NCBI RefSeq assembly: GCF_001194135.2
Contig: NC_068985.1
Location: forward strand, 78,529,798 to 78,569,317
Length of the DNA: 39,520 nucleotides
Reading direction: 5' to 3'
From: Octopus bimaculoides
Taxonomy: Eukaryota
Shown here: in pieces, positions 1 through 38,829 of the stretch
Layout: the number at the start of each line of letters is the position of its first letter
Position numbering within the stretch: the first letter of the stretch is position 1
Program-made: the position numbers and the translations under genes
The notes under the pieces: generated by a model
Database searches by the model: none
Told to the model about the DNA's origin: nothing
What the model saw: only the letters and a program-made list of their open reading frames with translations

Positions 1-850
1 CTCACAACAACAATAGCACTACCTGAATATTTACCTGAATCTCATAATCATTGAGACAGAAAGCCTGTCTGTTCAAACCTGCAACTCTGTTGGGAAACAA
101 CCTGAAAAATCCAGCAGAAGAAGATTTGATTTGGTTTTTCTCAAACAAGAAAAACTTTGACCAAGATCAAAAAGTTAACAGAAGAAATGACAGACGGTTA
201 TGTGCAAATTCTTCTGAAGTTCCAAGTGTTCTGTATACAAAATTTCCTGCAACTGTCATGATTTCAGGGGTTTATCAGCAATGAAAAACATGTAATACCT
301 CCTTAATTCTTTCCACAAGGCCTTAGAATTAACTCTGCCACCTACATTGAGGTCCTGGAAACAATTGTTAAGCCCTGGATAGACAGTGTATGCAATGGAA
401 GGCCATATGTGTTTCAGTAAGACTCTGCACTATTACACATGGTTCTAGTAACACAGGAATGGATGGTTGAAAATTTTCATGATCACATAACCCCTAACAT
501 TTGGCCTCCTAATTACCCACATCTCAATCCATTGAACTATTATATGTGGAGCATTGTTGAGGGAGAGGTCAATGAACACACCCATAATACCAAAGATTCT
601 TTGAAAGCTGCCATAGTCAGAGTAATCTTCAAAATGAACCAGGACTACTTGATTCCAGCATGTAGATGATTTAGATCTCATATAGAAGCAGTTGTTGAAG
701 CTGAAGGTGGCTTTATTGAATAACATTATAGAATAGAAGGTTTATTTTTATCCTCATAGCATTTTTTGATAAATAAAGTTATTATCTGTTATTATATATC
801 GTCTTTTTTATAAACATAAATCTGTCTTCAAATATTTTACACACCCTGTA
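1..850 (+). mobile_element. Degenerate Tc1/mariner transposon, maT (DD37D)-like, 3' half with right TIR
   Basis: Broken frames read TKFPATVM..., NEKHVIPP*FFPQGLRINSATYIEVLETIVKPWIDSVCNGRPYVFQ*DSALLH...WPPNYPHLNPLNYYMWS. There are 37 residues between the second catalytic D and the third position (mutated to N). The element ends ACACCCTG followed by TA at 849-850. Confidence 0.85.
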
Positions 851-3590: not shown

Positions 3591-3876
3591 CACTGTTTTA
3601 ATGAGCCCACATCTAATGAAGTAGCCATCCTTATGGTTGGTGATCCCCATGAAAATCATAATATTCTCATTCATGTTCAAGATAACAACCTTAAACGTGT
3701 TTCACAGACTCATCCCTCTTATGATGCTCTCCAATATAATCTCATTCTGTGGAATGGACAAGATGGGTATTATTTCTATATTCCTTGGATTGAACCTGCA
3801 ACAGGATAGCCACTTACAAACAAAAAGGTGTTGTCAAATGACTTCTATTCTTACCAACTGATGTTAAGACCAGAAT
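3591..3876 (+). pseudogene. Helitron RepHel fragment (Helitron-like N-terminal/Rep region); missed by the ORF track
   Basis: The frame with AAT at 3600 reads HCFNEPTSNEVAILMVGDPHENHNILIHVQDNNLKRVSQTHPSYDALQYNLILWNGQDGYYFYIPWIEPATG*PLTNKKVLSNDFYSYQLMLRPE*. This matches the Helitron motifs NxPTxxEVA, HxSYDALQYPL and FYxYxLMxR. Confidence 0.85.
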
Positions 3877-3877
3877 A

Positions 3878-4076
3878 ATCAAATCCTTTCTATTATAGGT
3901 ACAAGGCCTGAAATTTCAGGGGAGGGGACCAGTCAATTACATCAACCCCAGTGCCTCACTGGTACTTAATTTATCAACTGCAAAAGGATGAAAGGCAAAG
4001 TTGATCCCAGCGGCATTTGAACAGGTGAAATATCACTCAAGCATTTTGCCCAGCATGCTAACGATTCTGCCAGCCT
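3878..4076 (-). mobile_element. tRNA-derived SINE with Nin/Deu-like central domain
   Basis: The reverse complement has the head gctggcagaatcgttagcatgctgggcaaaatgctt, a B-box-like gttcaaatgcc, and ctttgcctttcatcc...gataaattaagtaccagt...cactggggttgatgtaattgact. Confidence 0.8.
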
Positions 4077-8984: not shown

Positions 8985-9217
8985 GCACATAAAATACACC
9001 ATTTGAGCATGGCCGTTGCCAGTGTTGCCTGACTGGCCTCATGCGGGTGGCACGTAAAAGCACCCACTACACTCTCAGAGTGGTTGGCGTTAGAAAGGGC
9101 ATCCAGCTGTAGAAACTCTGCCAAATCAGATTGGAGCCTGGTGTAGCCATCCGGTTTCACCAGTCCTCAGTCAAACCCATGCTAGCATGGAAAGCGGACG
9201 TTAAACGATGATGATGA
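8985..9217 (+). mobile_element. 5'-truncated RTE 3'UTR copy ending in (GAT)n
   Basis: Highly similar to 12450-12722; ends ttaaacgatgatgatgat. Confidence 0.8.
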
Positions 9218-9255
9218 TATATATATATGTGTGTGTGTGTGTGTGTATATATGTA

Positions 9256-10960
9256 CTAGCAATGCATCCCAGCATTGCCCGTATTATTTGTTCCTTTCTT
9301 ATGGGCAGAATCAGTATAGCTAATATATAGTGAACTGGATTACTGGTGTAATGAAAGTTATTGTTTGTTTAAAAGTGAAGAAGGGAAGGGTACAATTTGC
9401 ATGGGTTTGCATGAAAGTGCTTTCTGTTCTTAAGAAGGATCACCAACTATGTATTGTTTCATTGTATAAAAGGAGGTTAATATGATTTTGCCCAGAAATC
9501 ACGTTTTTAAAATTGCAGTTTCCCCCATACCCGTCACAATTGTAACTTCTTTACAAACTTTTTTTTATCCATGGAGAAAAATACAGAGATTGCAAATCTA
9601 GGAAATATATTTTTTCTTAAAGTTCAATTTTTTTAAAGAAACACTCAATGCACCTTCCCCCACCCTGCCTACCTATCACCTACCTGCTTTCAAAAAGCAA
9701 AATACACACTATGTTTCACGCATGTGTAGAATTGTGCTAAAATAGCAGATGTAAAAAATATTAGAGCACCACCAGAAAACCTGACATGCTAGAAACAACA
9801 TTATTTTTGATAAACAACATTATTTCTGAAGAAACTACCCCACTTTTCGAAAAGCTAAAATGAAACATTAGGAGTTTGTAACTTTTTGAAAGTGGTAAGG
9901 TAATGGGTAGATGATTGGGAAGAAGATTTTAGTGTTTCTTTAAGAAAAAAGAAAATTCTTAAAGATTTGTNNNNNNNNNNNNNNNNNNNNNNNNNNNNNN
10001 NNNNNNNNNNNNNNNNNNNNNNNNNNNNNNNNNNNNNNNNNNNNNNNNNNNNNNNNNNNNNNNNNNNNNNNNNNNNNNNNNNNNNNNNNNNNNNNNNNNN
10101 NNNNNNNNNNNNNNNNNNNNNNNNNNNNNNNNNNNNNNNNNNNNNNNNNNNNNNNNNNNNNNNNNNNNNNNNNNNNNNNNNNNNNNNNNNNNNNNNNNNN
10201 NNNNNNNNNNNNNNNNNNNNNNNNNNNNNNNNNNNNNNNNNNNNNNNNNNNNNNNNNNNNNNNNNNNNNNNNNNNNNNNNNNNNNNNNNNNNNNNNNNNN
10301 NNNNNNNNNNNNNNNNNNNNNNNNNNNNNNNNNNNNNNNNNNNNNNNNNNNNNNNNNNNNNNNNNNNNNNNNNNNNNNNNNNNNNNNNNNNNNNNNNNNN
10401 NNNNNNNNNNNNNNNNNNNNNNAGCAAGAAATAATTCATACAGAAGTTTTACCAAGAGTGTGTGTGTGGGTGTACATGCATGCGTGCATACATGTATGTG
10501 TGTATTCCAAAGGAAATTATTTTATGGCATTCTTTCGTTGGAATTAAAGAAAGCTGTCAACTCAATCATATAGGATCACATGATTGTTCGTTAATTTCCA
10601 TAAACATTTTTAATTTCTTTATGCTTTGAAGAAAGCAGAAATTGAAAGAGAGGAGAAAGTGTAAAGGTAACATTTGCTTTAAAGTGAGAGCAGAAAGTGA
10701 AAGAGAAGCTGAAAGATGTATGTATGTGTATATGAAATGGATATGTGTGTGCATGTGTGTGTGTGTGTGTGCATGTGTATGTGTGTGAGAAAGAGACTGA
10801 GTGAAGGTGTGTGTTGTATGTATTTTTTGCATATACATGGAAGTGGGACTCACTCTCTCTCTCTCTCTCTCACACACATTATCGCTCATATACACATACA
10901 TAAATACATATGCATACATCTGTTTTCTATATGTGTGTGCATTTGAGAGAGCAAATGAGT
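9256..10960 (-). mobile_element. Non-autonomous Helitron-like element, copy 2 (spans an N-gap)
   Basis: CTAG at 9256-9259 with a degenerate hairpin. 9260-9960 is the reverse complement of ~5400-6130, and 10440-10900 is the reverse complement of ~4690-5070. Confidence 0.65.
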
Positions 10961-11344
10961 GACTGTATTTCCTCATAACACATAGAGAAATGGATGTCTT
11001 TTAATGTACACACTGATATAGAAAATGTGACTTTACCATTATTGTGGTATAAGTGTCATTTAGAATAGTTGAATTATAGAAAGATTATAATTTTTAATTT
11101 TTGTAATACAAATGTGTAAATGAAAATAAAGTTTATTTCTTAACTGAAAGATTACTGATTCTTTTGATACCCCATGCGCCAAAATCGGCAACTCAGTTTT
11201 CGAATGTATTTATTAATTTCCGTAAAAATATTTTATTTGTTTTTGCATTGAAGAAAGCAGAAATTGAAAGAGAAGAGAAAGTGAAACTGTGATATTTGCT
11301 TTGAAGTGAGAGCAGAAGGTGAACAATGTATGTGCGTGTATATG

Positions 11345-12722
11345 TACAGGAATTCAAGACAGGTTGCCCCTGGGAGCTCCTCTATGCTGATGACCTTGCA
11401 CTAATTGCTGAGTCACTATCAGAACTAGAGAAGTTTCAGGTGTGGAAGCAGGGACTAGAATCGAAGGGCCTTAGAGTCAACCTAGCTAAAACCAAAGTCC
11501 TAATAAGTAGGAAGGTAGATAAAACACAAACCCCTTCAGGTAGATGGCCCTGCTCAATCTGTAGAAAAAGTGTAGGTAGAAACTCTATAAGATGTACCCA
11601 GTGCAAGCTATGGACACATAAGAGGTGCAGCAACATCAAAGGCAGGTTAACTAGGAAGTTAGTTTTTGTATGTGGCAGATGTTCAGGTGCAATAAACACT
11701 GTANNNNNNNNNNNNNNNNNNNNNNNNNNNNNNNNNNNNNNNNNNNNNNNNNTGGCGACAAAGAGCCTCTCACTCAGAGTAAAAGGCAGACTGTATGACA
11801 CATGTGTACGAACAGCCATGCTACATGGCAGTGAAACATGGGCTGTGACTGCTGAAGACATGTGTAAGCTCGCAAGGAATGAAGCCAGTATGCTCCGATG
11901 GATGAGTAATGTCAGTGTGCATACTCGACAGAGTGTAAATACCTTGAGAGAAAAATTGGACCTAAGAAGCATCAGTTGTAGTGTGCAAGAGAGACGATTG
12001 CGCTGGTATGGTCATATGGCAAGAATGGATGAGGATAGCTGTATGAAAAAGTACCACACCCTAGCAGTTGAGGGAACCTGTGGAAGAGGTAGACCCAGGA
12101 AGACCTGGGATGAGGTGGTGAAGCACGACATTTGAACATTAGGCCTCACTGAGGCAATGACTAGTGACCGAGACCTTTGGAATATACAGTGCATGAGAAG
12201 ACCCGGCAAGCCAAGTGAGACCATAATCCATGGCCTCTGCCAGGGATGTAGCCAGCCCACTTACGTGTACCTTTCCTTCATTGCACACTAAACTCGGCTT
12301 GCGAAGACCTGTTGGGGCAAGTGAAATCAAAATCGTGATTGAACCAAATTCAATGACTGGCACCTGTGCCAGTGGAGCACTAAGAGCACCATCCAAACGT
12401 GATCATTGCCAGAGAAGCTGTCTGGATTCCTTGCCAGTGGAACATAAATAGCACCATTTGAGCGTGATCGTTACCAGCGTCGCCTTACTGGCACATGAAA
12501 AAACATTCGAGCGAGGTCATTGTCAGTGCCGCTGGACTGGTTCCTGTGAAGGTGGCACGTAAAAGCACCCACTACACTCTCAGAGTGGTTGGCATTAGGA
12601 AGGGCATCCAGCTGTAGAAACTCTGCCAGATCAGATTGGAGCCTGATGCAGCATTCTGGTTCGCCAGTCCTCTGTGAAATGGTCCAACCCATGCTAGCAT
12701 GGAAGGCGGATGTTAAACGATG
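11345..12722 (+). mobile_element. 5'-truncated RTE-clade LINE: RT C-terminus with PHD-like insert, 3'UTR and (GAT)n tail
   Basis: Contains GCPWELLYADDLALIAES, GLRVNLAKTKVL, KGRLYDTCVRTAMLHGSETW, RRLRWYGHMARMDE and GRGRPRKTW. The 3'UTR is shared with other copies in the window. Confidence 0.92.
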
Positions 12723-13711
12723 NNNNNNNNNNNNNNNNNNNNNNNNNNNNNNNNNNNNNNNNNNNNNNNNNNNNNNNNNNNNNNNNNNNNNNNNNNNNNN
12801 NNNNNNNNNNNNNNNNNNNNNNNNNNNNNNNNNNNNNNNNNNNNNNNNNNNNNNNNNNNNNNNNNNNNNNNNNNNNNNNNNNNNNNNNNNNNNNNNNNNN
12901 NNNNNNNNNNNNNNNNNNNNNNNNNNNNNNNNNNNNNNNNNNNNNNNNNNNNNNNNNNNNNNNNNNNNNNNNNNNNNNNNNNNNNNNNNNNNNNNNNNNN
13001 NNNNNNNNNNNNNNNNNNNNNNNNNNNNNNNNNNNNNNNNNNNNNNNNNNNNNNNNNNNNNNNNNNNNNNNNNNNNNNNNNNNNNNNNNNNNNNNNNNNN
13101 NNNNNNNNNNNNNNNNNNNNNNNNNNNNNNNNNNNNNNNNNNNNNNNNNNNNNNNNNNNNNNNNNNNNNNNNNNNNNNNNNNNNNNNNNNNNNNNNNNNN
13201 NNNNNNNNNNNNNNNNNNNNNNNNNNNNNNNNNNNNNNNNNNNNNNNNNNNNNNNNNNNNNNNNNNNNNNNNNNNNNNNNNNNNNNNNNNNNNNNNNNNN
13301 NNNNNNNNNNNNNNNNNNNNNNNNNNNNNNNNNNNNNNNNNNNNNNNNNNNNNNNNNNNNNNNNNNNNNNNNNNNNNNNNNNNNNNNNNNNNNNNNNNNN
13401 NNNNNNNNNNNNNNNNNNNNNNNNNNNNNNNNNNNNNNNNNNNNNNNNNNNNNNNNNNNNNNNNNNNNNNNNNNNNNNNNNNNNNNNNNNNNNNNNNNNN
13501 NNNNNNNNNNNNNNNNNNNNNNNNNNNNNNNNNNNNNNNNNNNNNNNNNNNNNNNNNNNNNNNNNNNNNNNNNNNNNNNNNNNNNNNNNNNNNNNNNNNN
13601 NNNNNNNNNNNNNNNNNNNNNNNNNNNNNNNNNNNNNNNNNNNNNNNNNNNNNNNNNNNNNNNNNNNNNNNNNNNNNNNNNNNNNNNNNNNNNNNNNNNN
13701 NNNNNNNNNNN

Positions 13712-14033
13712 CTGCTCATGAAATTAATGTGCAAGTGGCTGAGCACTCCACAGACACATGTACCCTTAACGTAGTTCTCGGGGGTATTCAGCGTGACACA
13801 GTGTGACAAGGCTGGCCCTTTGAAATACAGGTACAACAGAAACAAGAAGAAAGAGTGAGAGAAAGTTGTGGTGAAAGAGTACAGCAGGGTTTGCCACCAC
13901 CCCCTGCCGGAGCCTCGTGGAGCTTTAGGTGTTTTCACTCAATAAACACTCACAACGCCCGGTCTAGGAATCGAAACCGCGATCCTATGACTGCGAGTCC
14001 GCTGCCCTAACCACTGGGCCATTGCGCCTCCAC
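13712..14033 (-). mobile_element. tRNA-derived SINE (same family as 26032-26410 and 29926-30295)
   Basis: Head gtggaggcgcaatggcccagtggttagggcagcggactcgcagtcataggatcgcggtttcgattc has an A box (TGGcccAGTGG) and a B box (GTTTCGATTC). The body matches the other two copies. Confidence 0.85.
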
Positions 14034-14048
14034 TCACACACACATATA

Positions 14049-14872
14049 CATGGTGATTCAAAAAGAATGAACTGATTTCATTATCCAATATTTTAATAAG
14101 GAAAAGCAATAGAAAACTCCACAATCAACTTTTATTTCCTGTCTAACAAGTGTTCAATGTGGCCACTACCTGCAGCATGGGCAACATCAATGTGATAAGA
14201 GAATTCCTCCTAGACATGTATTTGGAGAACAGAGCACCCACATGAAACAGTTGAGCATGAAAGAGATTCCCCTAAAGTGAAAATCTTCTGCACTGTCTCA
14301 GGACATGGTTTATGGTCCCTTTTTCTTTACAGGACAAACCTATCTTGATATGTTCCAAAACTGGCTCTTCACTTTTCTGCAAGCTGATTTGCACGACTTC
14401 ATTATACAACAAGATGGAGCACTTCCCCATTAGCACCTCTATGGTTTGAGCATTTTTAAATGAAAAAGTGCTCCAGCGATGGATTGGTCAGAAAGGGGCC
14501 CCAAGGCCTTGCTCTTTGTGCTTGGCCTGCAAGATCCCCAGACCTCACTGTATGTGATTTTTTTCTTGTGGGGGTATGTAAAACATTGTGTTTATGTTCC
14601 ACCACCACTCACTAACTTTGATGACCTTAAACATCGAATAAAAACAGCGATCAACTCAGTGGATTGTGATATGCTAATACGTGTCTAGGAGGAATTATCT
14701 CATCGCATTGATGTTGCCCATGCTGCAGATGGTGAACACACTGAACTCTTGTAAGACAGGAAATAAAAGTTGACATTGCGTAAATACTCGAGACTTAGCT
14801 GGAGTTTTCTATTGTTTTTCCTTATTAAAATATTGCATAATGAAATTGGTCCAATCTTTTAAAATAATCTTG
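14049..14872 (+). mobile_element. Tc1/mariner (rosa/DD41D-like) internally rearranged element with ~170-190-bp inverted arms
   Basis: Motifs HERDSPKV, VYGPFFF, QQDGA, WIG and WPARSPDLTVCDFFLWGYVK are present. TA flanks both ends. 14049-14220 is an inverted copy of ~14682-14872. Confidence 0.8.
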
Positions 14873-15059
14873 TATATATATATATACACACACATATATA
14901 TATATATATATATATNNNNNNNNNNNNNNNNNNNNNNNNNNNNNNNNNNNNNNNNNNNNNNNNNNNNNNNNNNNNNNNNNNNNNNNNNNNNNNNNNNNNN
15001 NNNNNNNNNNNNNNNTCCAAATTTTATTTAATTTGCTTTGCGGGAAGGACTGTTACAAC

Positions 15060-20657: not shown

Positions 20658-21484
20658 ATTGAAAAAAAGTTTCGGAAAGCTAACATTTTAAAATTCTTCG
20701 GGAAGCGACACTGTGATAGTTTCTATATTTAACCGTGCGTGTATATTCNNNNNNNNNNNNNNNNNNNNNNNNNNNNNNNNNNNNNNNNNNNNNNNNNNNN
20801 NNNNNNNNNNNNNNNNNNNNNNNNNNNNNNNNNNNNNNNNNNNNNNNNNNNNNNNNNNNNNNNNNNNNNNNNNNNNNNNNNNNNNNNNNNNNNNNNNNNN
20901 NNNNNNNNNNNNNNNNNNNNNNNNNNNNNNNNNNNNNNNNNNNNNNNNNNNNNNNNNNNNNNNNNNNNNNNNNNNNNNNNNNNNNNNNNNNNNNNNNNNN
21001 NNNNNNNNNNNNNNNNNNNNNNNNNNNNNNNNNNNNNNNNNNNNNNNNNNNNNNNNNNNNNNNNNNNNNNNNNNNNNNNNNNNNNNNNNNNNNNNNNNNN
21101 NNNNNNNNNNNNNNNNNNNNNNNNNNNNNNNNNNNNNNNNNNNNNNNNNNNNNNNNNNNNNNNNNNNNNNNNNNNNNNNNNNNNNNNNNNNNNNNNNNNN
21201 NNNNNNNNNNNNNNNNNNNNNNNNNNNNNNNNNNNNNNNNNNNNNNNNNNNNNNNNNNNNNNNNNNNNNNNNNNNNNNNNNNNNNNNNNNNNNNNNNNNN
21301 NNNNNNNNNNNNNNNNNNNNNNNNNNNNNNNNNNNNNNNNNNNNNNNNNNNNNNNNNNNNNNNNNNNNNNNNNNNNNNNNNNNNNNNNNNNNNNNNNNNN
21401 NNNNNNNNNNNNNNNNNNNNNNNNNNNNNNNNNNNNNNNNNNNNNNNNNNNNNNNNNNNNNNNNNNNNNNNNNNNNNNNNNNNN

Positions 21485-21675
21485 AGTGAAAAACTGGATA
21501 AATGTAACCACCCGACTTCGGGGATCGAATGGACATTGCGCCTCATTTTTTTCATTCTTGCATATTCTCATTTTATTTTAATTACTCCGATTTTATGTTA
21601 GCGTTTTGTACTGTCTTTATGTTTTGTGATATCTTAAAAATTCTTTGTATAGCGCTTTATGGGTAATAAAGAAAT
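21485..21675 (+). mobile_element. 3' end of an unidentified retroelement carrying the family tail (body lies in the gap)
   Basis: An AT-rich 3'UTR-like tract ends ...tatgggtaataaagaaat and is immediately followed by SINE sequence starting cggtattttgtct. It has no Nin domain of its own. Confidence 0.5.
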
Positions 21676-21850
21676 CGGTATTTTGTCTGCCGTTACGTTC
21701 TGAATTCAAATTCCGCCGGGGTCGACTTTGCCTTTCATCCTTTCGGGGTCGATAAATTCAGTACCAGTTACGCACTGGGTCGATGTAATCGACTTAATCC
21801 CTTTGTCTGTCCCCTCTATGTTTATCCCCCTTGTGGGTAATAAAGAAACA
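21676..21850 (+). mobile_element. Headless Nin/Deu-domain SINE (B box, central domain, tail)
   Basis: cggtattttgtctgccgttacgttctgaattcaaattccgccggggtcgactttgcctttcatcctttcggggtcgataaattcagtaccagttacgcactgggtcgatgtaatcgact...ccccttgtgggtaataaagaaac. Confidence 0.85.
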
Positions 21851-22053
21851 AGTATTGAGTGAAGAGGAAAACTACAGAAAGTCGAAAGAGGTGTGGAGAT
21901 AGCATTGTAATTCTTCATTACCCACGAGGGGCCGACAAAGAGGGACATACAATTACATTGGGAACACATAAAAAAATGTACAATTAAAATAATATATCAA
22001 ATAAATAAAAACGTATGATATAATGAAAGATGGATAAAACGTAAAGATGAAAA

Positions 22054-22083
22054 TGGTGTTGCCCGCCCCATCAGGCAACACCA
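22054..22083. other. Perfect 10-bp stem-loop in the 3'UTR of element A
   Basis: tggtgttgcc-cgccccatca-ggcaacacca. On the element (minus) strand it is followed by ttttcatctttt. Confidence 0.7.
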
Positions 22084-22321
22084 CTTGCTTCCTTTTCTCT
22101 ATACTCCATTATGTCCAACTCAAATCTCTATCAAGAGGTAGCATTGACCCGCCAGGAGTGGAGGTGGAATTTAAAGAGTTGCCACCAGTGGTGGATTTAA
22201 GAGATATCGAACTCTAAAAGTATGAAATTAAAGAGAAAAAAAAAAGAACAATTGTAAATAATACATATAACGGTTCAAATGGTACTGCATGGGAATGGGG
22301 CCCATGTGTCCATTTTCATTT

Positions 22322-23596
22322 TTATATAACTTTCATTTCATTTACATTCGTTTTATGTTTTTTGTTCCCAAAGTCTGGGGGGTAAAACCCTGTAGTTATG
22401 CCATAATCAGTTCTAGGGGGTGATGTCTCCACCAACCATACCCGTTTCGTTATTAAATTTTCACCAAGTTCTTTTATGCACTCGAAGCATCTTTCCTCAC
22501 GTATCAAAATGCATTTTTCAGCACATTTCTCTGGCATTTTCACTCTTATTATTTCTTTTAACCTCTCGATTTTTCTCTCCATCTGCTCGCAATTCTCGTA
22601 CTTTATCAAAAGCCCCTTGTATTCCACATCTTTCTCCGTTCTCTCCTCCTCTTCTTGTACATTATTAGTTTCTGGCTTTTCTATCTCTTTTATGTTTTCT
22701 GTTAACCGTTCCTTTGACTTAATTTTTCTTTCGTTTTTTAGGGTTAGTAGCTCCATTTTCGTTGTTCTTTGTTTTCTCTGTTTCACACTTCTGTCTCTTT
22801 TATTTCCTCCGTGTGGTCTACAGTTTTTCCTCCTCTACTTGTGCTTTCTCTTGCTGTGGCTGTGTGAACTCATATAAGGGGCATTTGGTCTTCATATGAC
22901 CTCATTCCCCGCATATGTAGCAATTTGGTTTCCTTCCCTCGACTACAACATTTAGCGTTCTCTCATCCTCTACTTCTATCTGATAGGGAATTCTTTCTAT
23001 GACCTCGAAAGTGGCAAAAAGCCACATTTCGAGTCCAAATCCCCACCATTTGCACACTTTTGTTTTCGCCACTGATCCCAATTCCGGCTCCTCCTTGGTT
23101 GCAGCCAGCATTGTTGCAACCAACCACACTGGTTTAATATCTGGTGTAACTCTGGGAATTCGTATTTTTACACTTCTTCCTCTATAGCTTGGTAGCAATG
23201 CTATTTTCTCACGTCTTAATATGTTGGTTGCATGCTTGGTTTCCTCTTCTATAGTGGCGAACCTCACCTCAACCGTACCGAACTTTCCTCTGTTGATGTA
23301 CGTGGCTTCATTGATAATTTCACCCAGGTACTCCTCGATTTCTTCTTCGTCACCATTTCAATTTTACCGGTTTCGACAGCCTGTGTACGATACACTACTG
23401 TCCTCAGGATTTTATTTTCTTTAGTCTCTTTTGGGGGACACAATTTGTACGAGTCTCCCTCAACTTCTATCAAATTCCTGCTTCTGGTCACCTCCTCCAT
23501 ATCCAACTTGATTAACTTGGTTTCCAGCGGCACTGGCTTCCTCACCGCAGTGGCCTTGGTGTAGCTTTCCATGCTGGAGACACTACCACTTGCCAT
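22322..23596 (-). pseudogene. Gag-like ORF1 with CCHC zinc knuckle (element A), about 420 codons when reassembled
   Basis: Joining three frames gives MASGSVSSMESY...NLIEVEGDSYKLCPP...RTVVYRT / EEIEEYLGEIINEATYINRGKFGTVEVRFATIEE...LLPSYRG...WWGFGLE...VVVEGRKPNCYICGE*GHMKTKC. The CX2CX4HX4C knuckle carries a likely CGA>TGA change. An E/K-rich C-terminus follows. Confidence 0.8.
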
Positions 23597-23705
23597 AGTT
23601 GGGGGAAATGCAGCAGCTCACGTGAAATACAATCGTAATAATTCCACAAAAATCACAATTATTCACCGAGATAGTTTTCACAAAGTAACACAACATAATT
23701 CACAG

Positions 23706-23764
23706 AGCCGTTATACCGCAAAGCAGTTCAACCGGCGTACTAACGATTCTGCCAGCTCGCCGCC
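23706..23764 (-). mobile_element. 5' head (~59 nt) of Nin-type SINE joined to element A
   Basis: ggcggcgagctggcagaatcgttagtacgccggttgaactgctttgcggtataacggct matches the SINE head at ~4030-4076. The B box is absent. Confidence 0.85.
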
Positions 23765-23779
23765 TGTTCAATCAATACT

Positions 23780-24924
23780 GCCTTCATATCCTCTGCGTAG
23801 ACGTATGAATTCACGTTCACTCTTGCTATTGAATGAAACTTGATTTGTGGTAAGTCACATAATACCACACTCCATCTCCTCCACGTATCTTTTTTCCTTT
23901 CTCTTGGATTTTTGGTTCTCTTTTTTCTTCCTCCATAAATAGTATCTCCATCTCACCTTCATACAGTTGGGTTTCCGACGCTTTCTCCACTGGTAACTCC
24001 ACTTTCTTTTTCCCTTCCTACTGCCCTCCTTCACAGTTTCTTTTCTCACCTCTTCTCTCTTCTTTTTGCGCTTCTCTGGCGGAGAACTCATTCCTCCGCT
24101 CCTCCTTTTCTTTTTAACCATAGTGAATCCCTTCTCCGTTTCTTTTTCCGTTGCCTTGTCCTGTACTACCTGGTCCACACTCTCATGACTCTCCTCCTGT
24201 TCTGTTAGTATCTTTCTTTGGGTGCACCATGCCTTCATGTGGCCCCTTTCTCCACATGGGAAACACACTGACGGCCTACCCTCCACAGTAACTCTCAGTC
24301 TCACATCTTCTGGCAGCACAATCTCTTCCACCACACTATTCAAGTCCTCCGTTGTTGCCTGAAACGTTAATTCGATACCATATCCCCAGTAACCTACCTT
24401 CTGGGTCCTTGTAGCCTTCAGAATCTTCCCGTCTTTCACATGATATATTATGGCTGTCATCAGCCATTCTTCTTTCAGTTTGGGTGGCACCTTACTCACT
24501 CGCACTTTGGCCACACGTTTGCCGCAGTACGAAGGCAAGAGCACCCATTCCTCTGTGGAGTGCTTTATTGTTTCCTCCTCCGTTGAGAAGCGCACCTCCA
24601 TAATGGCATATCTTCTTTCTCTCGTAATGTATGTTGAGAATCTTTTTATATTCTTAACACATTCCTCTATGGTCTCTATTTGTGCAATTTCTATCTTTCT
24701 CGTAGCTGCCTTCATGGTTTTAAACATGACCGTTCTTTTCGTCACGTTGGCCGATAGCTTTTCGGGCGGTGTTAGCTTCAAAGTGTCTCCTTCCTTTGTT
24801 ATTAATTTCTCACTTCTATCTTTCTAGGCTCCACTTTTATCTCGTGGACCTCCAACTCTCGCGTGTGTACCCCTTTGCTCGTTGCGGCCGCATAACTTGG
24901 GCCTGCCTCCGGCGCCTTCTCCAT
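23780..24924 (-). pseudogene. Gag-like ORF1 with CCHC zinc knuckle (element B), 3'-interrupted
   Basis: ATG at 24924 (MEKAPEAGPSYAAAT...), then a frameshift to KLITKEGDTLKLTPP...RTVMFKT...MEVRFSTEEE...LLPSYCGK...YWGYGIE...VTVEGRPSVCFPCGERGHMKAWC...GFTMVKKKRR. It aligns motif by motif with element A. Confidence 0.85.
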
Positions 24925-25052
24925 TTTCCCGCAATGGGAAACAAAACAACAATTAACGAATCAACAACGGCAATAATTCAAACAACAATTCAATCAATAA
25001 TGGCAACAAGTCGATAAATAGTTCAACATAGACTCACGCAATAACTTCATAG

Positions 25053-25111
25053 AGACGGGATACCGCTAAGCAGTTCGCCCGGCGTGCTATCGTTTCTGCC
25101 GGCTCACTGCC
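25053..25111 (-). mobile_element. 5' head (~59 nt) of Nin-type SINE joined to element B
   Basis: ggcagtgagccggcagaaacgatagcacgccgggcgaactgcttagcggtatcccgtct. The SINE similarity ends at the same position as in element A. Confidence 0.85.
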
Positions 25112-25469
25112 TTTAATGAGAAGTTAGATGTGCGTGGACACAAGAACGAGAATACTAGTTCGTGATCAACTGTACACGGGTTGTTGCGATGCTGTATCGA
25201 GATGTTGTGACTGTAATGCGGAGCCGGTTGTGGATGTGATACTGAACCGGTCACTTGACACAGGAGTCTCGCAGGTTATATATTCACCGTTAATCCGTGG
25301 AGCTAACACACAAACAGTGAATCGAAGCGTTGAAACCTGGGCGAGTTATTTGTTATGCTGTGTACGTAGAGAGATGACGTTGGTGAGAAATTTGATGGTG
25401 GCAACGAAGACGGAGGTCGCTGGAACTGGCTATCTTGTGTGGTCAGAGGCTACACTTTAAAAGGTCTGA

Positions 25470-32249: not shown

Positions 32250-34900
32250 AACATGTGGAAGTGACATAAGTCATTGAAGAGATAGGTGACTGAGGTTTCG
32301 GAGGTGTTGGTGAAGTTGTGGTGTTTGTTGTTTGAAGAGGTGTGTGATGAAGGGGAATATTTGGCTCTGTAGTGAGGGCTTCAGAGAAAGCACGCTTCAC
32401 TCTGTCAATCGAAACTGTGTGTTTTTTTCCACTAATGTTTATGGTAAAAAGCTCGTCCGTACATACACACAGTAAGGTCCAGTGTAAGGTTGTGTGAGAG
32501 GACCTTTCACAGAGTCTTTACGTAAAAACACATGCATCCAGGAAGCAATATCAGAAAAAACAGCAGAAGATACAGTTTGTCACCGAGAGGACATTGGTGG
32601 AAGGTCAGACAAATAAGCCTGTGAACGATGTACATATGTTGTTGGGTCGTGGGTGGATAAATCCTCAGGTGCCAACATCTGACCAAGAAGAGACAATGGA
32701 ACACCAAAGAGTAGCTTGGCTGGTGAATATCCCAAATCCTCTTTCACCAAAAGGCAACAACCCAAAAGAACAGGTAGGTTCTTTTGGATGTTTCACACCT
32801 AAAATCTGTGAAAGTTTTTTAAAGAATTGTCTCCTACGGTCAGTCATGATGCTTAACGGGACACCAAACCACGACATCCAACTTGAGACTAGAGCTTGGG
32901 CTGCCGACTCTGTAGAGATATCACATAATGGAACAGTCTCAGGCCAACGCGAAAGACGGTTGACACATGTAAGAATGTAGCTGAAACCACAGCTAAAGGG
33001 CCAAGGACCAACCAGGTCTATATGGAAATGTTGAAAATGAGCATCTGGAGGTTCAAAAGTGCCAAGGGGGGCGCAAATGTGCTTGTGTACCTTAGATTGC
33101 TGGCATTGTAAATAAGAGTAAGACCATGCAGTAATATGCCAATGCATATTCGGCCAGAAAAAAATGAGCTGCAATAAGCTTTACAGAGGTCATGATGCCA
33201 GGGTGTGATAGCATATACAAGGTGTTAAAAACAAGTCTTCGGTGTCACTCGGGAACTAAATGACACAGAAAATCGGTTGAAACATCACATAATATAGGTC
33301 GGTCAGCAGTTGGCAATGAAAGGTATTCAAATTTACGGTGTGCAAATTCATCAGATGAGGTATCCAGCGAACTCAAAGCGGGTTGGTCAGCAGCTAAAGT
33401 AGACAAATTAATCTCAGCAGCAGATGACAAGAAACGTATGAGAAGCTGCAATAGGGTATCAGCCACTATATTACTGGAACCAGAAGTATACCGGATATCA
33501 CTAGTAAACTGTGATATGAAATCCAATTGCCGGGTTTCTCTTGGTGAGTACTTGTCCACTTTTGATAATAAAGCGAATGTGAGAGGATTATCATCAGTGA
33601 AAATTGTGAATTCTTAACCCTTGAAAAAATGACAGAAATATTACACAGCTAGGAAAATGACCAACAGTTCTCTGCCAAACATGCTATAATGAGATTCAAT
33701 GAGTTTGAGCTGGCAAGAGAAGAAAGCCAAAGGTTGCATCCTATCATGGTAAGACTGTTGAAGAACAGCACCAACTGCAGTATCAAATGCATCAATAGAG
33801 AGAGAGAAGCAAGTACTCTCAGACAAGTTTTCCAGTTCATCTTTCATTGTTTGAAAAGCTTGCAGGTGCAATGGTGTAAGAGAAATAACCTCGTTCTTTT
33901 TTTGTTTTTTTTCCTATTTTGTAACACCTGAGTTAAAGGGGCCAGTTTCACAGTATACTGCAAGATGAACCGGCAGTAAAAGTTTACCAATTCCAAAAAG
34001 CAGCAAAGCTGCCGAAGAAATGTAGGAGAAGCAAGACTTTGTATAGTCTGAATTTTCTCAGGAACAGGTCGAATTCTGGTGCTGTCTGTCAGATGCCCCA
34101 AAAATTCCAAAGAGGAGGAACCAAAAACACATTTGGCAGGGTTTAATTTCACTTGGTACGTATTTAAACGCTGGAAGAGCAGTGTTAAGTGTTTCTCAGG
34201 AGTAGAACCAGCGATTAGTAGGTCATCTATGTATGCAAACACAAAATGCAACCCACAAGGGACCTCATCCATGAATCTCTGGAACATATTATCTGCATTT
34301 TTAAGTCCGAAAAGCATGGAAAGGGATTCGAAGGACTCGGATGAAGTGACGATAGCAGTCTTCGGTATATCATCCAGGTTAACAAAAATCTGGTGATATG
34401 CCCTTACTAGGTCTATCTTTGAAAATACTGTGCAACCGTGCAACCATGCCGTCAAAGCATAATGGTCATGATACCAACAATATGGCGAAGCAGTGGGAGA
34501 AAACGAATGCCGTCCAGAAGATGAACGGCTAGAGGACCTGTAGTGGTGAAAATTTTAAACAGAACACAATTTCCTGACTTCCTTAGTCAATTCCAAAATA
34601 GCTTGAAGAGCTACTGCTTGTGTGGAACTGCTGTCGACTGCAGAAGGAGGAACAGAAGAAGTTGCAGCAACTACTTTATTGTCCACTGGTACATTGACAG
34701 AGAATTCTATAATTTTGTCAGAAGAAAAAGCTAGTTGGTCCGCTGAACTGACCTCAACCATGGGTGCCAAAATCAACTGAATGTTACATGGCAACTAGGA
34801 GAAGAAAAGTTAGAACTGCCCTCAGGAGAAATGTCAGTCAAGTTGACACATCCTTGAAAATTTTCAGACAGTCGCCTATCTCCCAAACGTTCATCATCAA
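32250..34900 (-). pseudogene. pol: Disrupted Gypsy gag-pol
   Basis: Gag: LLDDERLGDRR. RT: FSKIDLVRAYHQI, MLFGLKNA, FQRFMDEV, YIDDLLIAG. RNase H: IDAFDTAVGAVLQQ, YSMFGRELL, SNIVADTL. Integrase: HIDLVGPWP, RLSRWPETVPL, FGVPLSIMTDRRRQF. Confidence 0.92.
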
Positions 34901-35289: not shown

Positions 35290-37420
35290 TTCTTCACAGG
35301 AATTTCGACAATACCAACAGGGTATTTTTACATGTATGTGTGTATATGTGCACTATTTGGAGTCAGAGCATACACAGATTTGTATGTTTTGTTTTATGTA
35401 TGTATTCTCATGCATATAGTTGCATTAGACATTTGCAGATATTTAAATGATAAAATTCTGGGAAGTTTTACAGATTTTTACTGTTCCAGTGATGGCTTGG
35501 ATCTGTAGTCTTCAAATCAGCTTTCTCCTTTCTGGTTTTGAGAAGCTTAATTTCTCTAGACTGGTATTTAGACAGTGTGTTACATATCCCAGTGCCCCAT
35601 TAATTACAAGTATAAACCTGAACTTGTAATCTGGATAAAGTAATTGCAGATTTCTCAATAGTTCAGCGTAGGTATTCTCTTTTTCAATGATCTTCAGCTT
35701 TATGTCAACATCTACTGAGCAGCTGATTTCCACAACTGTACACAGTTTCTCTTCTCTGTCCCAAATCATTATATCAGGTCTATTGTGTTTACATTTTATT
35801 GAGGTTTTCACTTGGACATTCTACCAGTACTCCTTTTTATTATGGGTAGCTATGGCTTCACCATTCTGTAGGTTCTTATTTCATTGTCCTCGGGGTTATA
35901 CTTTCAATGGATCTCGTTATACAGTGTCCAGCTAAAACATCATGTCTCATCGGTAGATAATACCATGATGACATTTTTGGACAACTGCTTATGATGTAGA
36001 TGATATCTTTGATGTTAACTCCACAAAGTCTACATTGGTTGTCACATTTTATTACTTTTCCTGCATCTCTGTCCCTTTTGTGCATCAGGTATTTAGTTGA
36101 TATTTCCTGTTCCTGGATTGCAAACAAATACCCTTCAAAGTGGCGGGTAGTAGTCCGGTTGTTGGTTCATGGTAGACTGCTTTGATGATCAATGTTACTA
36201 TCATCTCTGAGCTTTCTATTAATATATCCACACATGGTCTTCTGCTCATATACACTCATCCTTTCATCTGATGATATATTGCAGTAGAGCCGTGTGAATT
36301 TGGGCATGTATTTAAAGTTATCAGACAAGGAATGCTATTCAAAGAGCTACCTTCCAAGTTTTATGATGTTATCAGCCTCATGTATGCAAACTTGGTCAAG
36401 GGATATACTTCAACACTTGGTGGTTAATAGATGTTGCAGAAGGGATATGATATAACATTCGAAGGCATTTTGGATCAATGTTAAGCCTCTGCCACCTTGT
36501 TTTCTTTTTAGTCAGAGTTGGTCTACATCACTGTTGATGTGGAAATTATGTGTCCTTGTTAGTATCTTCTAGGTTTTCACATCAATGGTTTGGATCCCAT
36601 CAAGCATGCAATCAAGCGACCCAAATGTTGGTATGAGAACTGGCACTGCAAACACATTGTGGACCACTGTTTTATTGAATGCAGAGAATTTTGTGGTCCA
36701 AATTTTCTTTATTCAGCTGTAATATTCTTTTGTTACAGATACCATTGTAAGATATCTTTTCATCCACCCCCAGATACCTGTAACATTCCTCATCAGATAG
36801 AGGGGAAACAGTCAAGTCATTGATGGAGATGTTGCTAGTCTGCTTTACAGATTTCCCTATTTTCATAACCATATCCTGACCAAACTCCAGCCCTATATCC
36901 TTTGAGAATGTAGTAACCAGGTCAAGGCTCTTTTTTCATCTTGTACATATTCTTTATATATAGACTCAAGTCATCCACAAAGAAATAGCACATAATTTTG
37001 GTATTTCTCTTTCCTTGTGAACCAGTGAGATATCCTTCAGACTTCAACATTAATGAGAAGGGGTTTACAGAAAGTATAAACAATATCACAGAGAGGCTGT
37101 CTCCTTGGAATATGCCTCTGTGATACTGCATTCTATCAGTGATAATAAAGTCACTCCTTGTGTTTAAATTCGAGATGGTGGCCCATGATGAAGTCAGGTC
37201 AGCTCTGGCTTTGACTGTGCTCACTGGAACTTTAGCAAGTTGTAGGGCTTCTAGCATCCATGAGTTGGGAACAGAGTCAAACACTTTCTTGTAGTCTAGC
37301 CACATTGAAACTAGGTTCTTTCTATGCCCCCACACCTCTGATACCACAGTTTTGTTGATTAACAATTGCTTAGCACATCTCCAGACTCTCTTCTTCCCAG
37401 CTGCTAGTTCTGCTGTGATG
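35290..37420 (-). mobile_element. R4/Dong-like non-LTR retrotransposon with restriction-like endonuclease, 5'-truncated and decayed
   Basis: RT: WLDYKKVFDSVP, RGIFQGDSLS, FFVDDL. Knuckle region: FAIQEQEISTKY...CRLCG...IISSCP...RHD. RLE: HNRPDIMIWDREEKLCTVVEISC...EKENTY. Confidence 0.85.
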
Positions 37421-37499
37421 ATGTTATTGCCTTCATGTGTTTGTGCGTGTGTGTGTACTATGGTATTATTATCACAAACCACAAAAATGTGACAAAGAC

Positions 37500-38200: not shown

Positions 38201-38829
38201 ACCATGTTTGTTTATAACACATGTAATTCATTGATGTAAGGGGTCTTTGAGATACCACAGAGTTTTGGCCTTATTGTGTGTCTCAGTCAACAAATCTAAA
38301 GACAAGCAAGTTATATCAACTTGCCTAACTTGCTTGTCTTTACATTTACTCATATATATATATATATATATATNNNNNNNNNNNNNNNNNNNNNNNNNNN
38401 NNNNNNNNNNNNNNNNNNNNNNNNNNNNNNNNNNNNNNNNNNNNNNNNNNNNNNNNNNNNNNNNNNNNNNNNNNNNNNNNNNNNNNNNNNNNNNNNNNNN
38501 NNNNNNNNNNNNNNNNNNNNNNNNNNNNNNNNNNNNNNNNNNNNNNNNNNNNNNNNNNNNNNNNNNNNNNNNNNNNNNNNNNNNNNNNNNNNNNNNNNNN
38601 NNNNNNNNNNNNNNNNNNNNNNNNNNNNNNNNNNNNNNNNNNNNNNNNNNNNNNNNNNNNNNNNNNNNNNNNNNNNNNNNNNNNNNNNNNNNNNNNNNNN
38701 NNNNNNNNNNNNNNNNNNNNNNNNNNNNNNNNNNNNNNNNNNNNNNNNNNNNNNNNNNNNNNNNNNNNNNNNNNNNNNNNNNNNNNNNNNNNNNNNNNNN
38801 NNNNNNNNNNNNNNNNNNNNNNNNNNNNN

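What the first reader, a model, noticed from the sequence alone, without database searches (positions are those of the whole stretch)
21911..23764. ORF1-only retroelement bracketed by a SINE head and a SINE tail
Seen: SINE head (59 nt), 5'UTR, a ~420-codon CCHC gag-like ORF1, a ~410-nt 3'UTR, and a tail matching the neighbouring Nin-SINE. There is no room or motif for an EN/RT ORF2. Known: ORF1-only non-autonomous L1 derivatives (HAL1) exist, and Tx1/L1 ORF1s have the V-x-EG-x-P-CCHC layout. Inference: this is a HAL1-like, protein-coding non-autonomous family that uses the same RT-recognition tail as a tRNA-SINE. I do not recall such a family being described in cephalopods.
Basis: partly seen in the sequence, partly recalled or inferred. 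Interest (0 to 1): 0.85.

Follow-up and report, generated by a model that had tools for sequence, protein, structure and literature searches.

The report
Gag-only retroelement copy in octopus
This is a broken copy of an octopus family of short retroelements that encode only an RNA-binding (gag-like) protein and borrow the copying enzyme of a related full-length LINE through a shared 45-base tail; the kind is known from mammals (HAL1), but I found no description of it in cephalopods.

Summary
They are a 59-73 nt match to a SINE 5' end, about 105 nt of leader, a CCHC gag-like ORF1, about 410 nt of 3' sequence, and a 45-nt tail shared with the neighbouring SINE. The ORF1 is not intact: it has three in-frame stops and at least three frameshifts. 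Its last 27 codons and 3'UTR do not match the family's usual 3' end.

The main inference holds. ORF1-only units of 1.7-1.9 kb recur in O. vulgaris, O. bimaculoides and a third, unidentified sample. One unit has an intact 467-codon ORF. One solo copy has a 9-bp target-site duplication. dN/dS between ORF1-only subfamilies is about 0.1. A 5-kb L1/Tx1-type LINE carries a homologous ORF1, an endonuclease/RT ORF2 and the same tail. The tail holds a small covarying hairpin.

The SINE head is probably not part of the element. Most family members lack it. Where related copies carry head pieces, those pieces behave as duplicated target DNA from insertion into SINE heads at two recurrent positions. Units usually sit in head-to-tail arrays. 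Verdict: a real, HAL1-like family in octopods, and this copy is a decayed chimera. I could not check Repbase or Dfam.

The parts
23693..23765 (-). SINE-head match (SINE nt 1 to about 59-73). It starts exactly at SINE nt 1 (GGCGGCGAGCTGGCAG...). It contains an A-box-like TGGCAGAATCG but no B box.
   Evidence: Local alignment to the SINE consensus gives z = 24.7. Alignment with five SINE copies. Pattern search gives 3 matches against 0 expected.
23597..23692 (-). The element's own 5' leader. It resembles the leader of the neighbouring element and of the L012 copy, and contains a T5 run.
   Evidence: Read directly. blastn to L012 starts at about window 23669.
23350..23596 (-). ORF1 piece 1 (MASGSVSSMESYTKATAV...), about 82 codons, ending at a frameshift.
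   Evidence: tblastn with P0002 and P0005 gives 84-96% identity.
22803..23348 (-). ORF1 piece 2: RRM-like core and CCHC knuckle (VVVEGRKPNCYICGE*GHMKTKC). In-frame stops at 22902-22904, 22818-22820 and 22800-22802.
   Evidence: Pfam zf-CCHC at 20.7-22.6 bits. An AlphaFold model of a homologous core matches tandem-RRM proteins.
22322..22786 (-). ORF1 piece 3 (third frame): K/E-rich linker and C-terminal domain (..CILIREERCFECIKELGENL..). Homology to the family ends at about 22403. The stop is at 22322-22324.
   Evidence: P0002 matches 22801-22514 at 68%. The break against L012 is seen.
21956..22402 (-). Non-family 3' module (last 27 codons plus 3'UTR). It includes the inverted repeat GGTGTTGCC/GGCAACACC at 22055-22082.
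   Evidence: blastn finds no match to the conserved family 3'UTR. Only the last 40-65 nt match other tails, the best being L003 unit 1 at 83% over 65 nt.
21911..21955 (-). 3' tail TTGTATGTCCCTCTTTGTCGGCCCCTCGTGGGTAATGAAGAA, shared with SINE-a, other ORF1-only units and the LINE. It contains the mini-hairpin CCC-CTCGT-GGG.
   Evidence: Covariation of the hairpin.
23770..25112 (-). Neighbouring second ORF1-only element in the same orientation. It has a SINE-head match (nt 1-59) at 25054-25112 and a 308-aa ORF at 23855-24781 that is 35% identical to this ORF1. Its C-terminal domain, 3'UTR and tail are missing.
21485..21678 (+). 3'UTR and tail of a third family member (same subfamily as L012, 94% identity). 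It is cut by the N gap at 20749-21484.
21679..21850 (+). SINE-a copy that starts at SINE nt 48, directly after the previous tail, and carries tail type (a). This is the 'neighbouring SINE' of the finding.
   Evidence: The same junction occurs in L012 at 10833.

Best explanation
Window 21911-23765 (minus strand) is a dead, rearranged copy of an octopod family of 1.7-1.9-kb non-autonomous non-LTR retrotransposons. These elements keep only an ORF1.

The ORF1 protein has tandem RRM-like domains, one CCHC zinc knuckle, a K/E-rich linker and a small C-terminal domain. The family has no endonuclease or reverse transcriptase.

Inferred mechanism: the element RNA is reverse-transcribed at a nicked target by the ORF2 protein of a related L1/Tx1-type LINE. 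That protein recognises the shared ~45-nt 3' tail, which holds a 3-4-bp hairpin with the loop CTYGT just before TAATAAAGAAA. The same tail mobilises one subfamily of the abundant tRNA-type SINE. A second, related tail type (b) links another ORF1-only lineage with another SINE subfamily.

ORF1 has been kept under purifying selection along the ORF1-only lineages. This suggests that the element's own ORF1 protein matters for its propagation (inferred).

The SINE 'head' at the 5' end is most likely the upstream part of a SINE into which the element inserted. Insertions driven by this tail recur at SINE nt 13/14 and nt 47/48 and regenerate the site as a target duplication. That would also explain why units pile up in head-to-tail arrays. 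I rate the family reading at about 0.8 and the head-as-target reading at about 0.55.

Shown: the anatomy, the family, the partner LINE, the shared tail, target-site duplications elsewhere, and the selection signal. Inferred: trans-mobilisation, the role of the hairpin, and the target preference.
For: Family:
- The homologues that carry source names are all from octopods: O. bimaculoides, O. vulgaris, O. sinensis and Argonauta hians.
- Hits lie on at least seven O. vulgaris chromosomes.
- ORF1-only units ending in the tail are L001 (at least 7.5 units of 1780 bp), L004 (4), L002 (2), L003 (2), L015 (solo), L012, L013 and the window (3).
- L001 7523-8926 is an intact 467-codon ORF.
- L015 6916-8649 is flanked by the 9-bp duplication CTGGGTTCG.

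Selection: dN/dS is 0.07-0.14 between the L001, L002 and L003u2 subfamilies.

Partner LINE:
- L002 9201-14219 has ORF1, Exo_endo_phos (2e-13), RVT_1 (3e-29) and zf-RVT (4e-9), and a 19-bp target duplication.
- Its RT piece matches human L1 ORF2p best (4e-21).
- Its last 45 nt are 89-98% identical to the tails of the L001, L002 and L004 units, 73-84% to the other Octopus ORF1-only tails including this copy, and 76-82% to SINE-a tails.
- The Argonauta LINE has a related tail.

Hairpin: 87.5% of cells are paired against 68.7% in shuffles (0/500). Slid controls give 20-53%. The stem is CCC/GGG, GGC/GCC or GCC/GGC in three lineages.

Fold: the model has pLDDT 78 and matches tandem-RRM proteins.

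Head as target:
- There is no head in the L001, L002, L004 and L015 units or in the LINEs.
- The L003 units begin with SINE nt 1-28 and nt 14-32, and each tail is followed by SINE nt 14 onward.
- A SINE-in-SINE case in L004 has a 16-nt duplication of nt 14-31.
- Window X and L012 tails are both followed by SINE nt 48 onward.
Against: - In the window itself no SINE remainder follows the element's tail, and no target duplication flanks it. So the target-site reading of the head is not shown for this copy.
- Both this element and its neighbour start exactly at SINE nt 1, which would also fit a chimeric transcript.
- Only about 45 nt are shared with the LINE, so descent from that LINE is not shown.
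- Trans-mobilisation is inferred, not tested.
- The hairpin is tiny, and I derived it from the same sequences on which I scored it.
- Arrays could also grow by unequal crossing-over (adjacent L001 units are 99-100% identical) or by RT template jumping.
- The window comes from a gapped draft assembly, so the chimeric 3' end may be an assembly artefact.
- Cataloguing in Repbase or Dfam was not checked.
Confidence: 0.8

Rival explanations
1. One reading: a composite element whose own 5' module is a SINE head. The head would act as a promoter or 5' end that is transcribed and retrotransposed together with ORF1 and the tail.
For: Both this element and its neighbour (35% protein identity) begin exactly at SINE nt 1 and share 59-73 nt with the SINE. 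No SINE remainder follows this element's tail. LINE-derived and SINE-derived heads are known to be swapped between mollusc retroposons (PMC4758252).
Against: - The head is absent from the 13 units in L001, L002 and L004, from solo L015 and from both LINE copies.
- The head extent differs between copies (nt 1-28, 14-32, 1-59, about 1-62/73). In L003 and L004 it equals the sequence that follows the tail, which is what a target duplication looks like.
- The head has no B box, and the leader contains a T5 run that would stop RNA polymerase III.
- No target duplication flanks head plus element.
- Both heads are close to the young SINE consensus, although the two ORF1s are saturated at synonymous sites.
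Confidence: 0.2
2. The head-to-tail arrays and 5' SINE pieces arise in single integration events. The reverse transcriptase would jump from one RNA template (at stall points near SINE nt 14 and nt 48) to the 3' tail of another tailed RNA, building concatemers.
For: The whole L003 composite (unit 1, unit 2, SINE) is flanked by one 13-bp duplication, ATATATTTAACCT. Junctions recur at the same two SINE positions in independent loci and with different SINE subfamilies.
Against: The same duplication is expected if a SINE inserted first and the units then nested into its head. The L004 SINE-in-SINE case would need two jumps, but only one nested insertion with a 16-nt duplication. Variant bases shared between successive head pieces in L003 fit serial nesting.
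Confidence: 0.25
3. A domesticated host gene family: tandemly duplicated gag-like genes, not mobile elements.
For: Arrays of near-identical units exist (94-100% identity). dN/dS is low. NCBI annotates several as 'uncharacterized protein LOC...'. Arrays L001, L002 and L004 share a ~250-bp upstream flank.
Against: Fourteen of 15 array units have broken ORFs. Every unit ends in the LINE/SINE tail. A solo copy has a target duplication. Copies lie on at least seven chromosomes, and deeply diverged subfamilies sit side by side in one array.
Confidence: 0.05
4. A one-off internal deletion of a full-length LINE copy.
For: ORF1 is homologous to the LINE ORF1, and the tail is the same.
Against: Many copies in at least two Octopus species share the same ORF1-to-C-terminal-domain-to-3'UTR architecture without ORF2. 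Outside the ORF1 core and the 45-nt tail there is no similarity to the LINE.
Confidence: 0.02

Closest known systems
HAL1 (half-L1) of mammals
   Same: A non-autonomous LINE derivative that keeps only ORF1 and depends on the ORF2 protein of an autonomous relative (PMC5753468, citing Smit 1999 and Bao & Jurka 2010).
   Different: HAL1 arose repeatedly from contemporary mammalian L1 and keeps L1 ends with a poly(A) tail. Here only a 45-nt structured tail is shared with the LINE. The lineage is old: several subfamilies are saturated at synonymous sites. It has its own conserved 3'UTR and C-terminal domain. The ORF1 is of the RRM-plus-CCHC type, not coiled-coil/RRM/CTD, and the same tail also serves a SINE.
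L1/Tx1-group LINEs, including the sequence-specific Tx1 relatives (Keno, Mutsu, Dewa; Kojima & Fujiwara 2004, from my own knowledge)
   Same: The partner LINE has an APE-type endonuclease, an RT and a zf-RVT C-terminal domain, and its RT matches L1 ORF2p best. L1-Tx1 families are reported as recently active in O. vulgaris (PMC13282606). Recurrent insertion into tRNA-like SINE heads recalls the small-RNA-gene targets of Tx1 relatives.
   Different: I did not place the RT in a tree against Tx1 references. I found no common target motif. Some copies (L015, two SINE-a copies) lie in unrelated DNA.
Stringent-type LINE/SINE pairs with a common 3' tail (for example eel UnaL2/UnaSINE1; Ohshima & Okada 2005, cited in PMC9115989)
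   Same: A short conserved 3' tail with a small stem-loop is shared by a LINE and a tRNA-type SINE.
   Different: Here a third, protein-coding partner (ORF1-only) uses the same tail. Stringent tail recognition is typical of L2/CR1/RTE-type LINEs and, from my own knowledge, is not usual for L1-superfamily elements.
Drosophila HeT-A
   Same: A gag-only non-LTR element that relies on another element's RT and forms head-to-tail arrays (my own knowledge).
   Different: HeT-A arrays are telomeric, and HeT-A belongs to the Jockey clade. The L001 array lies at 64 Mb of a 226-Mb chromosome.
LP-SINEs and modular mollusc SINEs (PMC4758252)
   Same: Heads, bodies and tails are exchanged between LINEs and SINEs in molluscs.
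   Different: Those elements are short and non-coding. Here the possible module exchange involves a 1.8-kb coding element, and the head is probably only flanking DNA.

Membership tests
ORF1-only non-autonomous LINE derivative (HAL1-like kind) | Encodes a protein homologous to the ORF1 of an autonomous LINE | tested here: met
   The core aligns with the ORF1 of the L002/L004 LINE and of the Argonauta LINE. The profile search recovers them.
ORF1-only non-autonomous LINE derivative (HAL1-like kind) | No endonuclease or reverse transcriptase ORF, as a family trait | tested here: met
   Pfam finds only zf-CCHC in the sense frames of this copy, in the intact L001 ORF and in L015. Units are 1.68-2.02 kb.
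ORF1-only non-autonomous LINE derivative (HAL1-like kind) | Shares its 3' end with an autonomous LINE that could supply ORF2p | tested here: met
   The last 45 nt are 73-98% identical to the L002 LINE tail across the Octopus ORF1-only units (62% for the degenerate tails of window X and L012). The shared stretch is only the tail.
ORF1-only non-autonomous LINE derivative (HAL1-like kind) | Dispersed copies flanked by target-site duplications | tested here: met
   L015 has a 9-bp duplication. The L003 composite has a 13-bp duplication and the L002 LINE a 19-bp duplication. This feature is NOT met for the window copy itself.
HAL1 sensu stricto | Derived from mammalian L1 by loss of ORF2, keeping L1 UTRs and a poly(A) tail | tested here: not met
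   The host is an octopod. There is no poly(A). Outside the ORF1 core and the 45-nt tail there is no similarity to the LINE.
L1/Tx1 clade (partner LINE) | APE endonuclease, RT and a C-terminal zinc-binding domain in ORF2 | tested here: met
   Exo_endo_phos 2e-13, RVT_1 3e-29, zf-RVT 4e-9. The best PDB match is human L1 ORF2p.
L1/Tx1 clade (partner LINE) | RT groups with Tx1 references in a phylogeny | not tested
Sequence-specific Tx1-type insertion | Insertions at one defined position of a repeated target | tested here: inconclusive
   Five of about 12 independent tail junctions fall at SINE nt 13/14 or 47/48. Three arrays sit at the same point of a shared 250-bp flank. Other copies lie elsewhere, and I found no common motif.
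tRNA-derived SINE (for the 5' head) | A box and B box of an internal pol III promoter, tRNA-like fold | tested here: not met
   The head stops before the SINE's B-box region. ARAGORN and Rfam find nothing in the window. A T5 run lies in the leader.
RRM-plus-CCHC type ORF1p (Khazina & Weichenrieder type I; my own knowledge) | RRM fold(s) followed by a CCHC zinc knuckle | tested here: met
   The AlphaFold model (pLDDT 78) matches tandem-RRM proteins with Foldseek probability about 1 but low global TM of 0.25-0.35. zf-CCHC scores 20.7-22.9 bits against a cut-off of 20.8.
HeT-A-like telomeric gag-only elements | Arrays at chromosome ends | tested here: not met
   The array loci lie at 64, 39, 157 and 86 Mb of chromosomes of 129-226 Mb.

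The most novel reading that the evidence does not exclude
Octopods may harbour a three-way retroelement guild. It would consist of an L1/Tx1-type LINE, long-lived protein-coding ORF1-only parasites kept under purifying selection, and the hugely expanded tRNA-type SINEs. All three would be recognised through one small structured 3' tail, which exists in at least two co-evolving tail types. The machinery would preferentially nick the tRNA-like SINE head at two fixed positions, so that each insertion regenerates its own target and builds head-to-tail arrays. That would link the octopus SINE expansion to a tail-specific and partly site-specific L1-superfamily enzyme.
Probability: 0.35. Interest if true: 0.7.

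Novelty: new member of a known kind. Interest (0 to 1): 0.55.

Why it matters
SINEs and LINEs make up about a quarter of octopus genomes (PMC13282606), and their expansion is a defining feature of the octopus lineage (PMC8967140). The LINE that drives the SINEs has not, to my knowledge, been pinned down.

This finding names a concrete candidate partner: an L1/Tx1-type LINE that shares a 45-nt tail, with a covarying hairpin, with one SINE subfamily. It also shows that the same tail supports a protein-coding ORF1-only family that has kept its reading frame under selection.

That offers a natural system for asking what ORF1 protein contributes when the reverse transcriptase comes from another element. 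It also explains many 'uncharacterized CCHC protein' gene models in octopus annotations as retroelement ORF1s.

Tried and rejected
- ARAGORN and Rfam on the window found nothing. They do not help with the SINE head.
- I first thought that the 5' ends of the L001 and L004 units were degenerate SINE heads. A shuffle-controlled alignment rejects this (z from -1.2 to -0.2).
- I looked for a target duplication around the window copy and found none of 6 nt or more.
- I looked for the rest of the neighbouring element, or a SINE remainder, downstream of the tail. Neither is there.
- I tried to see the 5' end of a second copy of the same subfamily. In L012 it lies in an N gap. P0001 and P0163 have no DNA on record.
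- I tested whether the C-terminal domain or 3'UTR derive from the LINE ORF2 or 3'UTR. No similarity was found.
- Logan contigs L005-L011 turned out to be distant relatives or LINE fragments from an unknown species. They carry no head or tail information.
- Literature searches for a described cephalopod ORF1-only family found none. This is not proof of absence.
Full report
WHAT IS IN THE WINDOW

The window is eukaryotic DNA of about 36% GC with seven N gaps, so it comes from a draft assembly. The feature lies on the minus strand.

Reading from 23765 downward, the first 59-73 nt match the 5' end of the abundant tRNA-type SINE. The match starts exactly at SINE nt 1 (GGCGGCGAGCTGGCAGAATCGTTAG...). 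The local alignment score is 88 against 17 +/- 3 for shuffles.

About 105 nt of leader follow, then an ATG at 23596. The reading frame is broken:
- a frameshift near 23350;
- in-frame stops at 22902-22904 (inside the zinc knuckle, CYICGE*GHMKTKC), 22818-22820 and 22800-22802;
- further frameshifts between about 22830 and 22720;
- a last open piece at 22786-22322.

Read through, the ORF gives about 428 codons. These are 74-78% identical to the Octopus bimaculoides proteins A0A0L8FKL1 and A0A0L8ICM9.

The element ends at 21911 with TTGTATGTCCCTCTTTGTCGGCCCCTCGTGGGTAATGAAGAA. This matches the tail of the SINE at 21679-21850 on the other strand.

Pfam finds only a zinc knuckle in the three sense frames. 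However, the ORF is a pseudogene.

Compared with the one other copy of the same subfamily that I could fetch (L012, O. bimaculoides CM046624.1, 82% identity), homology stops at about 22403. The last 27 codons and the '3'UTR' are therefore a foreign module that merely ends in the same kind of tail.

THE SURROUNDINGS

Directly upstream, in the same orientation (23770-25112), lies a second element of the same kind. It has a SINE-head match of 59 nt and a 308-aa ORF that is 35% identical to this ORF1. Its 3' part is missing.

On the plus strand, 21485-21678 is the 3'UTR and tail of a third member, 94% identical to the 3'UTR of L012. It is followed at once by a SINE that begins at SINE nt 48. So three family members and a SINE sit within 4 kb.

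IT IS A FAMILY, AND ORF1-ONLY IS ITS NORMAL STATE

Word-based searches found relatives only in O. bimaculoides and O. vulgaris. The O. vulgaris hits lie on at least seven chromosomes. An exhaustive profile search found 1,422 representative proteins at E <= 0.001. The ones that carry names are from O. vulgaris, O. sinensis, O. bimaculoides and Argonauta hians.

I fetched the DNA around several of them.
- In O. vulgaris, L001 holds at least 7.5 units of 1,780 bp, L004 holds four, and L002 and L003 hold two each.
- Each unit has a leader, an ORF1, a conserved C-terminal domain, a conserved 3'UTR and the tail. The next unit starts immediately after the tail.
- One unit (L001 7382-9163) has a fully open 467-codon ORF. 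The other fourteen array units are broken.
- L015 is a solo copy of 1,734 nt with an intact 379-codon ORF and a 9-bp target-site duplication.
- A Logan contig from an unidentified sample (L013) again shows a ~1.65-kb ORF1-only unit preceded directly by another unit's tail.

Between three ORF1-only subfamilies that are 70-73% identical in DNA, dN/dS is 0.07-0.14. The reading frame was therefore maintained while these ORF2-less lineages diverged.

The predicted fold of the conserved core (pLDDT 78) matches tandem-RRM proteins such as SFPQ/NONO, raver1 and HuC. The protein is therefore RRM-RRM-CCHC, followed by a K/E-rich linker and a C-terminal domain.

THE AUTONOMOUS PARTNER

In L002 the array is followed by a 5-kb element (9201-14219). 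It carries:
- a homologous but divergent ORF1;
- an ORF2, in three pieces, with Exo_endo_phos (2e-13), RVT_1 (3e-29) and zf-RVT (4e-9);
- a 19-bp target duplication;
- the same tail.

Its RT piece matches human LINE-1 ORF2p best among solved structures. The same LINE follows the L004 array.

In Argonauta the homologous ORF1 is followed by a full ORF2 and a related tail, CCCTTGTGGCGAATAAAGAA.

The ORF1-only units share only two things with the LINE: patches of the ORF1 core, and the last ~45 nt. Those 45 nt are 89-98% identical between the L002 LINE and the L001, L002 and L004 units, and 62-84% identical for the other ORF1-only copies. This is therefore not a recent deletion product. It is an old side lineage that keeps the LINE's tail. 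L1-Tx1 LINEs are independently reported as recently active in O. vulgaris (PMC13282606).

THE TAIL

Sixteen tails were aligned: LINE, ORF1-only and SINE, of tail type (a), tail type (b) and the Argonauta type. They share an invariant CTYGT flanked by a 3-4-bp stem. The stem is CCC/GGG in type (a), GGC/GCC in type (b) and GCC/GGC in Argonauta.

In this alignment 87.5% of cells pair, against 68.7% in shuffles (0 of 500 reach the observed value) and 20-53% when the partner column is slid. The helix is tiny, and I derived it from these same sequences. I treat it as a good candidate for the RT recognition element, not as proof.

Type (b) is shared by the solo ORF1-only copy L015 and by the SINE at window 3884-4075. 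So there are at least two parallel tail 'guilds'.

THE HEAD

A shuffle-controlled alignment finds a SINE head in only four elements:
- this element (nt 1-73);
- its neighbour (nt 1-59);
- L003 unit 1 (nt 2-28);
- L003 unit 2 (nt 14-32).

It finds none in the L001, L002 and L004 units or in either LINE copy.

In L003 each tail is followed by SINE nt 14 onward, and each unit begins with the same stretch. The whole composite (unit 1, unit 2, SINE) is flanked by one 13-bp duplication. In L004 a 5'-truncated SINE sits inside another SINE's head, with nt 14-31 duplicated on both sides. These are the signatures of nested insertion into a SINE head, with the 'head' piece being target DNA.

A second recurrent site is SINE nt 47/48. 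It is used by window X and by L012, which join SINEs of different subfamilies. With a 12-25-nt duplication, an insertion at that site would leave SINE nt 1-59..73 upstream. That is exactly what this element and its neighbour show.

Against this reading, no SINE remainder follows this element's tail and no duplication flanks it. Given the foreign 3' module and the gapped assembly, the 3' side may be rearranged.

I therefore rate 'head = target DNA' at about 0.55. It is further weakened by the lack of a B box and by a T5 run in the leader.

Template jumping by the RT could also produce the arrays and cannot be excluded. Unequal crossing-over clearly contributes too, since adjacent L001 units are 99-100% identical.

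COMPARISON WITH WHAT IS KNOWN

The closest known kind is HAL1, the ORF1-only derivative of mammalian L1 (PMC5753468). This family works like HAL1 but is not HAL1:
- it has no poly(A);
- only a structured 45-nt tail is shared with the LINE;
- the ORF1 is of the RRM-plus-CCHC type;
- the lineage is old and diversified;
- the tail is also used by a SINE.

The shared-tail logic is that of stringent LINE/SINE pairs. The arrays recall HeT-A but are not telomeric. The recurrent hits in tRNA-like heads recall the sequence-specific Tx1 relatives (my own knowledge), though I found no common target motif.

I found no description of such a family in cephalopods in the searchable literature. Repbase and Dfam could not be consulted.

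VERDICT

The feature is real and is a new member of a known kind. The family-level inference is supported. The 'SINE head' bracket is probably flanking DNA. This particular copy is dead and chimeric. Interest is moderate. It rises if the tail-specific, partly site-specific LINE proves to be the driver of the octopus SINE expansion.

Noticed in passing
window 23770-25112 (-): A second ORF1-only element lies directly upstream in the same orientation. It has a SINE-head match (nt 1-59) and a 308-aa ORF that is 35% identical to this ORF1. It lacks its C-terminal domain, 3'UTR and tail. Its closest relatives are P0031 and P0027 (63% identity).
   Followed up: partly
window 21485-21850 (+): The 3'UTR and tail of a third family member are followed at once by a SINE starting at nt 48. 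The same junction occurs in O. bimaculoides L012 at 10833, with a SINE of the other tail type.
   Followed up: yes
L003 8261 and 10285; L004 ~3443-3600: There are three independent junctions of the form 'tail + AGAAACGTTAGCAC', where the SINE head starts at nt 14. The duplicated nt 14-31/32 suggest an insertion hot spot in the A-box region of the SINE head.
   Followed up: partly
L001 23-270, L002 5106-5332, L004 5515-5765: Arrays on three different O. vulgaris chromosomes start at the same point of a shared ~250-bp AT-rich flank (88-93% identity). This could be a repeated preferred target or a relic of segmental duplication.
   Followed up: partly
L002 9201-14219 vs L004 12847-16780: The two LINE copies are 93-96% identical in ORF2 but only about 70% identical in the 5'UTR and ORF1, where synonymous sites are saturated. 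This indicates a mosaic LINE with a swapped 5' module.
   Followed up: partly
L015 6916-8649: A solo ORF1-only element of another lineage has an intact 379-aa ORF, a 9-bp target duplication and tail type (b). That tail is shared with the SINE subfamily seen at window 3884-4075. This is a second ORF1-only/SINE pairing.
   Followed up: partly
window 22055-22082: A 9-bp inverted repeat, GGTGTTGCC ... GGCAACACC with a 10-nt loop, lies inside the foreign 3' module of the element.
   Followed up: no
window 21510-21530; L001 ~8990-9020; L012 ~10625-10650: The conserved family 3'UTR contains the small hairpin motif CCGACTTCGGGGATCGAG. It resembles part of the SINE core (TTTCGGGGTCGATAAA), which hints that the SINE body and the ORF1-only 3'UTR may share a module.
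   Followed up: no
window 2733-3131 (+), 11326-12135 (+), 36922-37482 (-), 32665-34455 (-): Fragments of other retroelements are present. ORFs at 11326-12135 (+) and 36922-37482 (-) carry RT-like motifs (..YADDLALIA.. in the first), and 2733-3131 (+) resembles the region upstream of a LINE RT. An LTR-type pol with RT and integrase-like ORFs lies at 32665-34455 (-). None carries the tail studied here. These identifications are by eye only.
   Followed up: no
window 3884-4075 (-): A full-length SINE has the same head and core as SINE-a but a different tail, type (b): ...CAGGCCTTGTACCTATAATAGAAAGG.
   Followed up: partly
window N gaps 1494-1628, 9971-10422, 11704-11752, 12723-13711, 14916-15015, 20749-21484, 38374-38829: The assembly is a gapped draft. 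Repeats with shared tails could have been misjoined, which may explain the chimeric 3' end of the element.
   Followed up: no
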